From: Oculina patagonica
Lineage: Eukaryota
Direction of reading: 5' to 3'
Assembly (NCBI RefSeq): GCF_052425735.1
Contig: NC_135761.1
Span: 24,118,001 to 24,182,000, forward strand
Length of the DNA stretch: 64,000 nucleotides
The notes under the pieces were generated by a model. That model was not told the DNA's origin and searched no databases. It saw only the letters and a program-made list of their open reading frames with translations. How positions within the stretch are numbered: the first letter of the stretch is position 1; the number at the start of each line of letters is the position of its first letter. Below, piece by piece: positions 57,032 to 62,880 of this stretch. The position numbers were made by a program, and so were the translations under genes.

Positions 57032-57590
57032 TGTATAAACTATTTTTCTCTCGTCGTAAAAAAGCAAAACGCGACAAGGCTTCGAAGCGGAGGATGGTTT
57101 CTCGGAAAAACCCTGTTTACCTGCTATGCCTGTATATGGTCAGAACGGCATTGTTATTATAGACATACTGTCAAGTTTGACGATCCCGCAGCTGCCATGA
57201 CAATAGCAAAACGGCTGTTTTCCTAGAAGTGGAAACCCCGTTTCGTTTAATCAGAAAGCAGCTGTCAAAAAAACCCGTGGAAGCTTCGCCTCTCGAAAAT
57301 TCTTGCTCCCGGATTTCAGCTTTTTTGCAATACATTGCTAGACAAAAACAGAGCTTAAAACGTGCTAAAAACAACTATGTTTGAATGTTTTGGCAGTGGG
57401 TTCAAACCTGTGAAAAAACATTCTGCCGAAGAAAAACAAACACAGAAAAGTTGAAGAAATTCAATCAAAAGGGCTCAGCAGGTATGTTAGTAAATTTATC
57501 GTAAGTGTGACAAAAACAGATGTCTAAGACTACAAACCATCAAGCCTTCGAGAGTTGTTTTCAAGGTTTCAGCAGGGATTGATAAGAACG
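57032..57590. promoter_or_regulatory. K2 upstream region, duplicate of the K3 upstream region (62220-62770), with GAS-type sites
   Basis: Colinear similarity to 62220-62770; TTCTCGGAA (57099), TTCCTAGAA (57220), TGTTTAC (57114). Confidence 0.7.
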
Positions 57591-57878
57591 CAAATACTCA
57601 GCGAATATTATCGAAAACATTGTGTTTGATCAAGCATATCGTGAATGAAAAGTATACGCAAGTATCTTATACCTACATCACCTTTATGTTACCTCGGATT
57701 TACAAGAGAATCTACAGAAGCTAGTTTATTCGAGAAAGAGAAAAAGAAAAAATAAATAAAATAATAATATATATATTTTTTAATATTATGATGTTTCGCT
57801 GAACGACGTATTTTCTTTCCAGAATTGCAAAAAAGATCACACACCCGCCTTTTTAGTGTAGATTAATAGCCGCTGAAA

Positions 57879-58180
57879 GGCGCGGGGCCTAACGGTTAGC
57901 GCGCTCGACTCCGAGTCGAACGGCCCGGGTTCGAGGCCTGGCAGGGGTGCTGCATTGTGTTCTTGGGCAAGACACTTTACACTCAAAGTGCCTCTCTCCA
58001 CCCCGGTGTATAAATGGGTACCGGCGAATTTACTGCTGGTGGGTAACTCTGCGATGGACAAGCATCCCATTCAGGGGGGAGTAGCAATACTCCTAGTCGC
58101 TTTAAAATGCTATGGAAACCGGGATAAGCTTCCGGCTGTATGGGCCACTTTGCTCGGACACAGACTTTACCTTACCTTTT
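57879..58180 (+). mobile_element. tRNA-derived SINE, full length
   Basis: A and B boxes; highly similar to 24851-25152; tttacc tail. Confidence 0.9.
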
Positions 58181-58189
58181 AATGGCCGC

Positions 58190-58700
58190 TGAACACCTCA
58201 GGAGCATTTCAGAATAGTGTGCCAGCCAATGTGCCCATGTACTGCTCGTTCGCGAGATCTGCGTTCTTGAGTGTCTTGAGTTCGACACTCGTGCCAGACC
58301 AAAGTTTGCCAACTTTGCATCTTCTGTGTTTGTGAGCAAAACATTTCTAGTTTTAAGTCACGGTGGACGATGCCTTTCTTGTGGGGTACCTCAAAGCATC
58401 TGCAATTTGTCTCATCCTCTTCAGGCTCATTTTGTAACAGTTTTACTGCTCTTCGTGTTAAGTGCTCGTTTAGACTTTCACTGACACACAACTCAGTTAA
58501 AATTAAAAAGTGTTTTGGCCAGATTTTTCTCTAAACGTGCAACGCCCAGGATGGCGATAACGTTGTTGTGGCTGACTACTTTGCGGAGGGTCTCGGCCTC
58601 ACTAAGTGCGTTATTAAGACCGCTTTCGTTTTCACAATGAATTTTCTTTAGGGCGATCACTTCCGAGCTAGCTTGGTCGTTGAGTTTGCACACGACAATA
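58190..58700 (-). pseudogene. Decayed kinase copy psiB
   Basis: Frameshifted pieces IALKKIHCENESGLNNALSEAETLRKV, SLNEHL, GIVHRDLK, ANFGLA. Confidence 0.75.
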
Positions 58701-58769
58701 TTCTCAAAGCAAAAGAGAAAATATTTAGCTACGAACCACAGAGCTATAAGAAGCGAGTTTTGAAGTTTC

Positions 58770-59730: not shown

Positions 59731-60434
59731 TGAATTGTATCGATGTTTTTCTGTTGCCTTCCCGCGCTGTTTACGACAAGATATTAGGCAAGCGCGCACT
59801 GATAAAATCGCAAGTCAACCGTCACGGCTTCGAAACCGAAGGTCAATTTCTTGGAAAATCCTTCTGTTTGTTGAGTCGCGTGACTTTTAATCGGACGCGA
59901 ATACCGTATCGGACTTGTGAAATGAATATGTTTTTTTTTTGTTTTCAATTTTCAAAACAGTATATTGTTGTAATCAATCGCTCCTTTATTCTGTATCCTT
60001 TACAAAATGCCTATTCTGTGTTGGGATTTACAGCGCATTCATGTGACCTAAATAGTGTCTTTCTGTTAAATTTGGAATTATTACTGAATGAAGTTTACAA
60101 TAAGCGTTACAAAATTTGTTTCCAAGAAGTTTGAAATGCTCAATTCCACATTCTAAGAAACGGTTCTAAAATATTATCAAACATTGCTCAGTTTTAAAAT
60201 AGTCACGACACGAGTGAAATGCATTCTTATAATTGGGGGAAATGTCTGAGACAACTTTTCCCAAACTTGTTACTTCAAACTTCTTTCTACTTCTTCTTTC
60301 TACTTTGAAAAATTATATACCTGAAGCCTGAAAAAGGTACCCCTTTCGGGCGGAGCCTCCCCGTATAGGCCATTATAGGGAGTACTCCCCCCCCCGGGGG
60401 GTTTATTTACTCATTTACGAAACACAACAAGAAT

Positions 60435-60566
60435 NNNNNNNNNNNNNNNNNNNNNNNNNNNNNNNNNNNNNNNNNNNNNNNNNNNNNNNNNNNNNNNNNN
60501 NNNNNNNNNNNNNNNNNNNNNNNNNNNNNNNNNNNNNNNNNNNNNNNNNNNNNNNNNNNNNNNNNN
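60435..60566. other. Assembly gap
   Basis: Run of N. Confidence 1.
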
Positions 60567-61235
60567 CACCTTCAGATTAATGAAAAAACTCAACCACTTT
60601 TTCACAAGTATTCACAAGATGAATATTGCTGTATCAATATAATAAGCTCATCAGTAACACTTCTATTTAAGTATACATGTAAAGCATTCGACCACAACTA
60701 ATTCAATACAAAGTCGTATATAGTGTAAAATTAAAATGTTATATCAATGATAAAGTTTCATTTTGTTTCTGCCTTGTTGGCACACATTAGAAGCTTATTC
60801 GTGGTTTTCACTTGATGTCTTCAAAATTGTAAAATCCAAAATTGCAAGACCCCTGAATTTCTATCCTTCACTGGCTGTTAGACATCCTTAATAAATATAT
60901 TGTTAGCTCGATAGCACCAGCCGTACCCTCATCCTGTAATTTTAAACAATCTGAACAGTCGAGGTTTGGCGAGAAGTGGAACATTCTGAAGAATAGCTCG
61001 AGTACGGAGTACCGTACAGACTTGAAACAAGGACAAGTAGATTATCTAGTACTTGTCTACGACCTGTTGTATCCTTTATTGTTTTGGTCCAATAGTTTTG
61101 CATTAATTTTTCGCGGCATGACAGTTGTGTGACAATGAAAACCACCCATTACTGAAAATATTTTATACACATGAATTACGTCTCACTTTCCTAGAAACCT
61201 TTAAACGATCCGGTGCCCTGTTACCAATAGTGGGT

Positions 61236-62219
61236 TTAACAACACTCACCGGTACTTGACGAATCCCGCTGGCCATGTTGGAGCCTTATAGCTCGGCGAA
61301 TGTTCATCACCTTGTCATACACCTTTTGAGCACTTGGTCGGTCATCTGGGTCGTACTGCAAAGCCTTGAGAGCGACTCTTTGCAGAGCGTTGGACCCTTG
61401 TGCATAGCTTGAGAATGCAATTCGGATACGACGACCAACCTCCTTCATTGCAAGCCCAAGGCCAACCTTTCCTACCCCATGAATTTTTACAAAGGCGCCG
61501 TACATTGCTTTTCCGTCAACCACGATGAAATCCCGCTCAAGGATTGCGTAAAACAGCGTGCCAAGTGAAAATACATCGGCCTTTTCTGTGTAATGGCCAG
61601 TGAAAAATTCAGGTGCCACCCAGTGTATGGGGCCAATTCCTGAGCTCATGTAATATTGCGTGTAACTGGTAAGCCATGAACCGTCATCTTCTTGAGCGTA
61701 GGTTCGTTTGAGTGCGGTGTACTCTCGAGCCAGGCCAAAATCAGCCAACTTCACATCCAACGTTGCAGTCAGAAGCACATTATCCGCCTTTAAATCGCGA
61801 TGAACCACTCCGCGTGAGTGGAGATGGGCAAGAGCTGCGGATATTTGACTTATCCATTTCAAATTCATTTCTTCAGTACTCGGTCGATCAAGACGCTCGT
61901 TTAAACTTCCGCCTGAGCAGTACTCAGTCAAAAGCAACATGTGTAAAAGACCTTTCGAATCAAGGTACTTATCTGCTGCTATGATTTCGATCACATTCTT
62001 GTGAGAAATTTTGCTGAGTGTTCTAGCCTCGCGGACAGCATTATAAAGCTGCGAGTCATACAAACAAGGAACATCTTTTAATGCATAGATTGTGGAACTT
62101 GCCTTGTCTTTTACTTTGTAGACGACACCAAAAGCACCATTGCCAAGTCGCTGTTGGATTCTAACTGTTTTGTTGTTAACTGAAACTCTCGGTGGAAGAT
62201 TCAGAGCGGCCTGCTGCAT
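61236..62219 (-). CDS. Protein kinase K3, PDIK1L/STK35-like, intronless, 327 aa, ends in CC
   Basis: GNGAFG, ALK, HRDLKADN, DFG, GPIHWVAPE, YTEKADVFSLG..ILERDF; close paralogue of K2. First ATG at 62219. Confidence 0.92.
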   Translation of the reverse strand: MQQAALNLPPRVSVNNKTVRIQQRLGNGAFGVVYKVKDKASSTIYALKDVPCLYDSQLYNAVREARTLSKISHKNVIEIIAADKYLDSKGLLHMLLLTEYCSGGSLNERLDRPSTEEMNLKWISQISAALAHLHSRGVVHRDLKADNVLLTATLDVKLADFGLAREYTALKRTYAQEDDGSWLTSYTQYYMSSGIGPIHWVAPEFFTGHYTEKADVFSLGTLFYAILERDFIVVDGKAMYGAFVKIHGVGKVGLGLAMKEVGRRIRIAFSSYAQGSNALQRVALKALQYDPDDRPSAQKVYDKVMNIRRAIRLQHGQRDSSSTGECC

Positions 62220-62880
62220 TTTATTTGCTATTCTTCTCTCGTCGTAAAAAACAAAATGCAACAGAGCTTCAAAGTGGAGGACGGGTTCTCGGAAAAATCC
62301 TGTTTACCTGCTATTAAATTCGCACCATGCCCGTATATGGTCAGAAAGTCATTGTCATTTCAGACATACTATAAAGTTTTACGGTCCCAATACTAAAAAC
62401 AACTTTCCCAGAAGTGGAAAACCCGTTTCGTCCAATCAGAAAGCGGCTGTCAAAACAAATCAGTATTTTCAAACATGGTAGCTTTGTCGATGGCGCCAGC
62501 TTCTCGCTCTCCGGGGTTTTGGCTTTTTCGCAGTACATTTTTAGACAAATACGAGGTTAAAACGTGCTAAAGTAGGTTCAAACCTTTACATAAACCTACT
62601 TAAATAAACTACTTACCGCATTTCTGCTGAAGAAAACGAAAACAGAAAAACTGAGGAAATTCAACCAGAAGAGCTCAGCAGGTACGTTGGTGAATTTTTT
62701 CTTAGAGATGGCCAAGAATACGAACCATCAAGCCTTCAAGATTTGTTTTCACGGTTTCAATGGGTACGATTAAGGACATTAGCTAAGCGCGCATAAAATC
62801 GCAAGTCAAGCGTCACGGCTTTGAAACCGAAGGTCAATTTCTTAGAAAACCTGTTGTTTGCTCAGTCGCGTGACTTGTGC
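62220..62880. promoter_or_regulatory. Divergent promoter between K3 and the LicD-family gene
   Basis: TTCTCGGAA (62286), TTCCCAGAA (62405), CCAAT (62432), TTCTTAGAA (62839); plus-strand donor CAG|GTACGT at about 62681. Confidence 0.6.

What the first reader, a model, noticed from the sequence alone, without database searches (positions are those of the whole stretch)
57099..62847. Nine canonical STAT/GAS sites (TTCYNRGAA) concentrated in the kinase array
Seen: TTCTCGGAA 57099, TTCCTAGAA 57220, TTCTTGGAA 59848, TTCCAAGAA 60120, TTCTAAGAA 60151, TTCCTAGAA 61188, TTCTCGGAA 62286, TTCCCAGAA 62405, TTCTTAGAA 62839. A rough base-composition estimate gives about one such site per 10+ kb. Three pairs are duplicates, so about six are independent. 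Between duplicates the variable middle bases changed (CTA/CCA, TTG/TTA) while TTC...GAA was kept. The copy upstream of dead psiA has lost the site (TTCTTGTCA at about 55530). A kB-like GGGGTTTCCA (minus strand, 57230-57239) adjoins one site. Inference: a STAT-inducible, interferon-stimulated-gene-like cluster in an animal without known interferons.
Basis: partly seen in the sequence, partly recalled or inferred. Interest (0 to 1): 0.8.

Follow-up and report, generated by a model that had tools for sequence, protein, structure and literature searches.

The report
Conserved STAT-type palindrome in coral kinase promoters
Almost every gene of a coral-specific, tandemly duplicated kinase family carries the same short palindrome (TTCYNRGAA, the shape of a STAT docking site) about 100 bases before its start codon. 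It has been kept across many corals while the DNA around it changed, so it is very likely a real control element, but nothing here shows that STAT binds it or that infection switches it on.

Summary
The region holds 9 against about 0.6 expected; the rest of the window is at chance. By descent they reduce to about five.

The window is Oculina patagonica, a tandem array of single-exon STK35/PDIK1L-like kinases. The core signal is one palindrome 75-76 nt upstream of both intact kinase ATGs, plus a homologous ~100-nt module upstream of dead copies.

In related arrays and contigs from other coral-derived assemblies, 25 of 28 family members have a TTCYNRGAA 74-151 nt before the ATG (median 103). Far flanks are saturated with change. 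The centre shows 11 different triplets, all Y-N-R, and the TTC/GAA half-sites were lost at most 4 times. That points to selection for a dimeric DNA-binding factor; STAT is the best known candidate.

Not supported or untested:
- The kB-like site fails the consensus and is not conserved.
- Site 61188 looks like chance.
- The "lost in dead psiA" argument fails, because other dead or orphan copies keep the site.
- STAT binding, inducibility and the interferon-like reading were not testable here.

The assembly gap is intergenic and its flanks are colinear with another coral. Earlier notes of this scan report similar STAT-type promoter motifs on other DNA of this genome.

The parts
57099..57107 (.). 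Proximal palindrome TTCTCGGAA, 76 nt upstream of the K1 ATG (57031, minus strand)
   Evidence: position and motif conserved family-wide
62286..62294 (.). Proximal palindrome TTCTCGGAA, 75 nt upstream of the K2 ATG (62219, minus strand)
57220..57228 (.). Distal palindrome TTCCTAGAA (-197 from the K1 ATG), next to the kB-like TGGAAACCCC at 57230-57239
   Evidence: flanks do not align to L001/L002
62405..62413 (.). Distal palindrome TTCCCAGAA (-194 from the K2 ATG), paralogue of 57220. It lies in the K2/LicD intergenic promoter beside a CCAAT box (62432-62439)
59780..59896 (-). D9-type promoter module holding the intact palindrome TTCTTGGAA (59848-59856), upstream of the dead kinase copy psiB
   Evidence: 83-85% identical to copies in L001/L002
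62775..62894 (-). D9-type module holding TTCTTAGAA (62839-62847). It is an orphan, with no kinase remnant between it and the K2 proximal module
55486..55574 (-). D9-type module upstream of psiA. It is decayed throughout, and its palindrome is broken (TTCTTGTCA at 55530-55538, two mismatches)
60006..60186 (-). Conserved ~180-nt intergenic module holding two palindromes 31 nt apart (60120-60128 TTCCAAGAA, 60151-60159 TTCTAAGAA)
   Evidence: five copies in window, L001 and L002, with 7 of 10 palindromes intact
61188..61196 (.). Single TTCCTAGAA just 3' of the K2 ORF; not conserved, probably chance
   Evidence: the aligned L001 stretch has no site
57059..57127 (-). D11-type ATG-proximal module of K1, homologous to the D9 module
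62246..62314 (-). D11-type ATG-proximal module of K2
55577..57031 (-). K1, an intact single-exon STK35/PDIK1L-like kinase ORF whose tail runs into a microsatellite
61239..62219 (-). K2, an intact STK35/PDIK1L-like kinase ORF, 100% identical to an annotated Oculina patagonica protein
58716..59612 (-). psiB, a dead kinase copy with an internal duplication; a second-type kinase fragment follows at 58172-58697
54453..55380 (-). psiA, a dead kinase copy
60435..60566 (.). Assembly gap. It is intergenic and its flanks are colinear with L001; it was left unfilled

Best explanation
The nine sites are mostly copies of a family-wide promoter element. Each gene of the coral STK35/PDIK1L-like tandem kinase family carries a near-palindrome T-TTC-Y-N-R-GAA-A about 75-150 nt upstream of its ATG, and tandem duplication copied it along with each gene.

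Shown here: the element is under purifying selection on both TTC/GAA half-sites and on the pyrimidine/purine identity of positions 4 and 6, while the centre base and the flanks are free. That is the footprint of a symmetric dimer reading double-stranded DNA.

Inferred: The whole array, and the second-lineage modules upstream of dead copies, would then be switched together by a tyrosine-kinase-to-STAT signal.

Not shown: which signal this is, and whether the response is immune.
For: Enrichment: 9 sites against 0.58 expected in the region.

Other corals: related coral kinase arrays carry 0.24-1.08 sites per kb. Unrelated kinase loci carry 0.089 per kb, and the rest of this window 0.14 per kb.

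Control patterns: 12 of 13 intact kinases in five genomic loci have a site within 200 nt of the ATG. 18 of 19 TTCN3GAA sites are of the Y-N-R type. Control patterns TTCRNYGAA, GAAYNRTTC, GAARNYTTC and TTCN2GAA score 0, 0, 1 and 0.

Family-wide: with JGI/ENA coral contigs added, 25 of 28 family members have the site at -74 to -151 (median -103), down to 47% protein identity.

Change on the family tree: far-flank columns change 8-12 times each. The centre columns change 5, 8 and 4 times, giving 11 different triplets, all Y-N-R. The site is lost at most 4 times.

Alignments: the palindrome is an island in otherwise unalignable upstream DNA.

Plausibility: a single STAT gene exists in the sea anemone Nematostella (PMC8713801, PMC3670263), and STATs read TTCN3-4GAA (PMC3670263).
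Against: There is no binding, expression or chromatin data.

Whether Oculina encodes STAT was not tested here.

Assembled contigs of four gene lineages begin 1-13 nt before a palindrome. If these are transcript 5' ends, the site lies at about +5 to +25, which is more like a core-promoter or 5'-UTR element than a classical upstream GAS.

Most sites are TTCT/AGAA-rich rather than the high-affinity TTCCNGGAA.

Earlier scan notes report the same motif in front of many unrelated gene families in this genome. That would also fit a general promoter factor.

Nematostella STAT knock-down had no effect on the cGAMP response (PMC8713801).
Confidence: 0.5

Rival explanations
1. The palindrome is a real, selected promoter element, but a non-STAT factor reads it or it acts as a start-site-proximal core-promoter or 5'-UTR element. 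It would then set basal or tissue-specific transcription of many lineage-specific coral gene families rather than mediate an inducible response.
For: Contig 5' ends sit 1-13 nt upstream of a palindrome in four lineages: the L003-L009 group, L013, L020 and L023. The distance to the ATG is tightly constrained (median -103). A conserved non-palindromic 3' extension, ATCG, follows the site. An E-box (GGTCACGTGA) lies next to it in several species. Unchecked scan notes list many other gene families in this genome with the same motif at their promoter heads.
Against: No known core-promoter element has this sequence. The contig ends may instead be assembly breaks at a repeated module, because L020 also ends at a palindrome-like module at its 3' end. 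Other transcript-like contigs extend 62-135 nt further upstream. The two-fold symmetry, including Y4/R6, fits a dimeric transcription factor such as STAT.
Confidence: 0.3
2. The array is an interferon-stimulated-gene-like, immune-inducible cluster driven by STAT, with NF-kB co-operating.
For: It shares the evidence given for the STAT reading. The family also shows rapid birth and death: two intact kinases beside two dead copies and a fragment in 10 kb. That pattern is common in immune gene families.
Against: The kB-like sequences fail GGGRNNYYCC and lie in non-conserved sequence. No literature links this kinase family to immune induction. STAT knock-down did not alter the cGAMP response in Nematostella (PMC8713801). 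There are no expression data.
Confidence: 0.12
3. The cluster is an accident of tandem duplication plus chance, and the palindromes have no function.
For: Six of the nine sites are paralogous copies. Within this genome alone, keeping the half-sites in three pairs at about 85% identity is only about P 0.05. Site 61188 is not conserved, and the pair-module palindromes decay in two L001 units. The D9 module as a whole (85-87%) is not clearly more conserved than the neighbouring pseudogene (76-78%).
Against: The proximal palindrome survives in 25 of 28 family members across many coral assemblies, although the flanking columns are saturated with substitutions. Control patterns are absent, and unrelated kinase loci lack it.
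Confidence: 0.05

Closest known systems
GAS elements (gamma-activated sites, TTCN3GAA; STAT5-type TTCYNRGAA) of bilaterian STAT target promoters
   Same: Same palindrome, same 3-nt spacer and same Y/R preference at positions 4 and 6. The sites are promoter-proximal, and some promoters carry two.
   Different: The binding factor is unproven and the organism has no known interferon. The site may lie at or just downstream of the start site. Most copies are TTCT/AGAA-rich rather than TTCCNGGAA. A conserved asymmetric ATCG follows the site.
Heat-shock elements (inverted nGAAn units, TTCnnGAA)
   Same: Inverted TTC/GAA triplets in a stress-gene-like promoter position.
   Different: The spacing is 3 nt, not 2. 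TTCN2GAA occurs 0 times in 5.85 kb of family promoters, and there is no third pentamer in register.
STAT-type palindrome promoter modules noted elsewhere in this genome by this scan (s1-271028, s1-281559, s1-270987)
   Same: The same motif sits in front of tandemly duplicated, coral-specific gene families, and those notes report it as conserved in other corals.
   Different: The gene family here is different (STK35/PDIK1L-like kinases). There is one dominant ATG-proximal site instead of a fixed tandem pair about two DNA turns apart. Those notes were not re-tested here.

Membership tests
GAS / STAT-binding element | Palindrome TTC-N3-GAA (STAT5-type TTCYNRGAA) | tested here: met
   25 of 28 family promoters have it, and 18 of 19 TTCN3GAA sites are Y-N-R
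GAS / STAT-binding element | Half-sites under selection, spacer base free | tested here: met
   at most 4 losses, against 8-12 changes per far-flank column; the centre N changes 8 times; 11 centre triplets
GAS / STAT-binding element | Located in the regulatory region of a gene | tested here: met
   -74 to -151 from the ATG. The exact position relative to the start site is unresolved
GAS / STAT-binding element | Organism encodes a STAT with a DNA-binding domain | not tested
   No tool-supplied STAT query was available. Literature: a single STAT in Nematostella (PMC8713801, PMC3670263)
GAS / STAT-binding element | Bound by a phosphorylated STAT dimer and confers ligand-inducible transcription | not testable with these tools
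   Needs EMSA or DAP-seq, CUT&RUN and reporters
Interferon-stimulated-gene-like cluster | Induction by viral or immune stimuli through STAT/IRF | not testable with these tools
   No expression data; no literature on these kinases in corals
NF-kB site | GGGRNNYYCC consensus, conserved | tested here: not met
   GGGGTTTCCA and GGGTTTTCCA fail the consensus scan, and their flanks do not align to other corals
Heat-shock element | Inverted nGAAn units with 2-nt spacing (TTCnnGAA) | tested here: not met
   0 TTCN2GAA in family promoters; 2 in the region
RNA hairpin in the 5' UTR | A stable self-paired stem formed by the palindrome | tested here: not met
   the isolated palindrome folds at 0 kcal/mol, and only 4 of 25 contexts pair TTC with GAA
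Core-promoter (start-site) element | Fixed position relative to the mapped transcription start | tested here: inconclusive
   Contig 5' ends lie 1-13 nt upstream in four lineages, but they may be assembly breaks, and other contigs extend further upstream

The most novel reading that the evidence does not exclude
TTCYNRGAA is the signature start-site-proximal promoter element of a large set of lineage-specific, tandemly expanding coral gene families: these kinases plus the membrane-protein, TRIM, protease and virus-like-element promoters noted elsewhere in this genome. That set would be either the first defined cnidarian STAT regulon or a previously undescribed palindromic core-promoter element. 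New gene copies would be born already wired into one common switch.
Probability: 0.25. Interest if true: 0.7.

Novelty: new member of a known kind. Interest (0 to 1): 0.45.

Why it matters
What STAT does in cnidarians, which have no interferon, is open, and no cnidarian STAT target site turned up in the searchable literature. This family offers a clean test bed. It provides dozens of natural promoter variants in which only the palindrome is conserved, natural knock-outs (the psiA module, and K0 and L014_5106 without a site), and natural centre-base variants. If STAT binds, the array becomes a ready reporter set for coral STAT signalling. If it does not, the element points to an unknown factor that controls many expanding coral gene families.

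Tried and rejected
- Chance or duplication only: rejected by the cross-species presence of the site with saturated flanks.
- Heat-shock element: wrong spacing.
- NF-kB partner site: off-consensus and not conserved.
- RNA hairpin: no stable self-pairing.
- Known RNA or tRNA in 49-64 kb: none.
- Transposon origin of the D9 and pair modules: a profile search found them only inside the kinase arrays of the window, L001 and L002. This gives no support, but it searched only the window and four loci.
- 'Site lost because psiA is dead': contradicted by dead psiB and the orphan module, which both keep it.
- TATA box 17-25 nt upstream of the palindrome: an A/T-rich patch is seen in several copies, but it is inconsistent with contigs that start upstream of the palindrome, so it is not claimed.
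- Exact-sequence look-ups of the window's own and NCBI-annotated proteins returned nothing.
- Literature searches for coral STK35/PDIK1L, coral STAT sites, or TTCNNNGAA in cnidarians found nothing relevant.
- The species of L001, L002, L010, L011 and the JGI/ENA contigs could not be named.
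Full report
**Observation.** A pattern search finds TTCYNRGAA at exactly the nine stated positions. The window has 17 sites against 7.0 +/- 2.8 in dinucleotide-preserving shuffles, and none of 100 shuffles reaches 17. The eight sites outside the finding (6873-25192) share no flanks and lie at about the chance rate. No site lies between 25192 and 57099. For 57000-62900, a first-order Markov model of the region itself expects 0.58 sites against 9 observed. 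Neighbouring patterns are not enriched there: TTCN2GAA 2, GAAN3TTC 2, TTCN4GAA 4.

**The gap.** The gap at 60435-60566 was checked first, as requested. No ORF of 70 aa or more lies between 60134 and 61236. The left flank looks like repeat-element sequence. The two flanks align in the same order and orientation to single continuous stretches in two units of another coral's array. The flanks are therefore consistent with one continuous intergenic spacer, and no site depends on the gap. Its letters were neither inferred nor looked up.

**What the region is.** The best database match to the ORF at 61239-62219 (minus strand) is a 100%-identical protein annotated 'serine/threonine-protein kinase PDIK1L-like [Oculina patagonica]'. 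More than 2,600 relatives follow, the closest of them from coral-derived assemblies. Pfam confirms protein kinase domains in K1 (55577-57031, minus), K2 (61239-62219, minus) and K0 (50596-51666, plus). Between them lie:
- two dead kinase copies, psiA (about 54453-55380) and psiB (58716-59612);
- a fragment of a second kinase type (58172-58697);
- a SINE-like insertion (57860-58170).

**How the nine sites relate.**
- 57099 and 62286 lie in the 'D11' module directly upstream of the K1 and K2 start codons (-76 and -75).
- 57220 and 62405 lie 120 nt further upstream in the same 5.19-kb duplication.
- 59848 and 62839 lie in a ~100-nt 'D9' module. Its third copy, at 55486-55574, carries the broken TTCTTGTCA.
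- Alignment A1 shows that D9 and D11 are themselves homologous. Four of the nine sites, plus the broken one, therefore descend from one ancestral promoter palindrome.
- 60120 and 60151 sit 31 nt apart in a separate conserved 180-nt module.
- 61188 stands alone.

About five sites are independent. That is still unlikely by chance (P about 3e-4 before correcting for choice of region), but it is not compelling alone. Within this genome, keeping 18 half-site bases in three pairs at about 85% identity has P of only about 0.05.

**Evidence from other corals.** Loci encoding the closest relatives were fetched from five other genomic assemblies (L001, L002, L010, L011, L014). A further set came from JGI/ENA coral-associated contigs (L017-L034). 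All the long loci are tandem kinase arrays and are again rich in the motif, at 0.24-1.08 sites per kb. Fifty-five unrelated kinase loci fetched by the same scan have 0.089 per kb, and only 2 of the 55 have a site in the 300 nt before the match.

Of 13 intact kinases in the five genomic sources first analysed (the window, L001, L002, L010 and L011), 12 have TTCYNRGAA within 200 nt of the ATG. In their 5.85 kb of upstream sequence, 18 of 19 TTCN3GAA sites are of the Y-N-R type. The controls TTCRNYGAA, GAAYNRTTC, GAARNYTTC and TTCN2GAA occur 0, 0, 1 and 0 times.

With the extra contigs, 25 of 28 family members carry the site between -74 and -151, with a median of -103. These members go down to 47% protein identity to K2. 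Left out of this count were duplicates of the same protein, ORFs lacking an N-terminus or with under 100 nt of upstream sequence, and one mis-called non-kinase ORF, L011_2670.

**Pattern of change.** Anchored alignments show the palindrome as an island. Flanks are essentially unalignable apart from T at -1/-2 and a weak ATCG at +2 to +4. On a maximum-likelihood tree of the proteins:
- far-flank columns need 8-12 changes each;
- the three centre columns need 5, 8 and 4 changes;
- the site as a whole is lost at most 4 times.

Eleven different centre triplets occur, and all are pyrimidine-N-purine. If the six half-site columns evolved like the flanks, some 60 disrupting changes would be expected. 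This is strong evidence for selection on TTC, GAA, Y4 and R6, which is the footprint of a two-fold symmetric protein dimer on duplex DNA. An RNA hairpin is not supported: the palindrome alone folds at 0 kcal/mol, and only 4 of 25 contexts pair it with itself.

**The other sites.**
- D9 module: conserved as a whole at 85-87% over about 90 nt between Oculina and L001/L002, with six of seven copies intact. The adjoining pseudogene remnant is 76-78% identical, so the excess is modest.
- D9 and dead genes: D9 persists upstream of dead or deleted copies in both Oculina and L001. Only the psiA copy is decayed, and it is decayed throughout. D9 may serve as a distal promoter or enhancer for the next kinase (inference).
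- Pair module: 7 of 10 palindromes are intact across five copies, and both are lost in two L001 units. There is no sign of special constraint.
- 57220/62405: they lie in sequence that does not align to other species. Other species do often have a second palindrome 50-290 nt upstream of the first.
- 61188: it has no counterpart in the aligned L001 sequence.
- kB-like decamers: they fail GGGRNNYYCC and are not conserved.

**Position relative to transcription.** Contigs from four gene lineages begin 1-13 nt upstream of a palindrome. These are seven independent run assemblies of one protein (L003-L009) plus L013, L020 and L023. If these are transcript 5' ends, the palindrome lies at about +5 to +25. 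However, L020 also ends at a palindrome-like module at its 3' end, so the ends could be assembly breaks at a repeated module. L017 and L021 extend 135 and 62 nt further upstream. The position is unresolved.

**Who reads it.** Among factor families known to me, only STATs read TTC-N3-GAA (site definition also in PMC3670263). Heat-shock factor needs 2-nt spacing. ETS factors need GGAA, whereas AGAA is as common here. Cnidarians have a STAT: there is a single gene in Nematostella (PMC8713801, PMC3670263). STAT is therefore the best candidate. The presence of STAT in Oculina, binding, and any inducibility were not tested here. The only functional cnidarian result found is negative for the cGAMP response (PMC8713801). 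No paper in the library links TTCNNNGAA with cnidarians or these kinases with coral immunity.

**Relation to earlier scan notes.** First readers and some follow-up agents of this scan report STAT-type palindromes in front of several other tandemly duplicated gene families on other DNA of this same genome. These are unchecked leads. They fit either a broad STAT regulon or a general promoter factor.

**Verdict.** Its core, one ATG-proximal palindrome, is a genuinely conserved cis-element of a coral-specific kinase family. The STAT reading is the best available but is unproven (about 0.5). The interferon-like, NF-kB-assisted reading is speculative (about 0.12). It is a new member of a known kind of element and of moderate interest.

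Noticed in passing
window 62432-62681 and 63508-63999; duplicate at 57433-57483: K2 and a LicD-family gene (ATG 63514, Pfam LicD) are head to head. On the plus strand there is a CCAAT box (62432), a conserved CAGCAG|GTAYGT splice donor (GT at 62682) and an acceptor (AG at 63508-63509). Together these suggest a non-coding first LicD exon with the D9 module inside its intron. The K1 duplication carried a copy of that exon and donor (GT at 57482), which is now orphaned.
   Followed up: partly
window 57860-58170 and 50000-50125: A SINE-like element with a tRNA-like head is inserted after the second-type kinase fragment, and an inverted partial copy lies upstream of K0 (74-90% complementary arms). 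ARAGORN and Rfam call nothing there.
   Followed up: partly
L001 890-925, 5560-5600, 9900-9935, 13275-13310; L010 9905-9925; L014 1195-1240: In several other corals an E-box (GGTCACGTGA or TCACGTGA, USF/MITF-like) lies directly against the palindrome (L010) or up to about 15 nt upstream of it. In Oculina the D9 module has GTCACGCGAC at that place, and the K1 and K2 modules have lost it.
   Followed up: no
window 55575-55860: An ATA/ATG-type microsatellite (about 290 nt) is read through by the K1 ORF as a long hydrophobic tail. The NCBI model for this gene instead ends earlier (384 aa).
   Followed up: no
window 60195-60261 and 63096-63162: A 67-nt inverted repeat (88%) flanks the K2 unit, one arm just left of the assembly gap. 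It may be transposon-derived.
   Followed up: no
window 52732-52791 / 53395-53454 and 53059-53167: A 60-nt inverted repeat at 97% complementarity, 603 nt apart, encloses a 55-nt tandem duplication. It looks like a small MITE-type element between K0 and psiA.
   Followed up: no
window 46435-47100 (minus): An intact single-exon bZIP_Maf transcription factor gene (Pfam E 3e-21) lies 3.5 kb upstream of K0. It has no TTCYNRGAA in its upstream kilobase.
   Followed up: no
L001 6044-16494: The L001 array repeats the same unit three times: pair module, D9 module, dead kinase remnant, proximal module, intact kinase. The pseudogene-containing unit was therefore itself tandemly duplicated, or it predates the split from Oculina.
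   Followed up: partly
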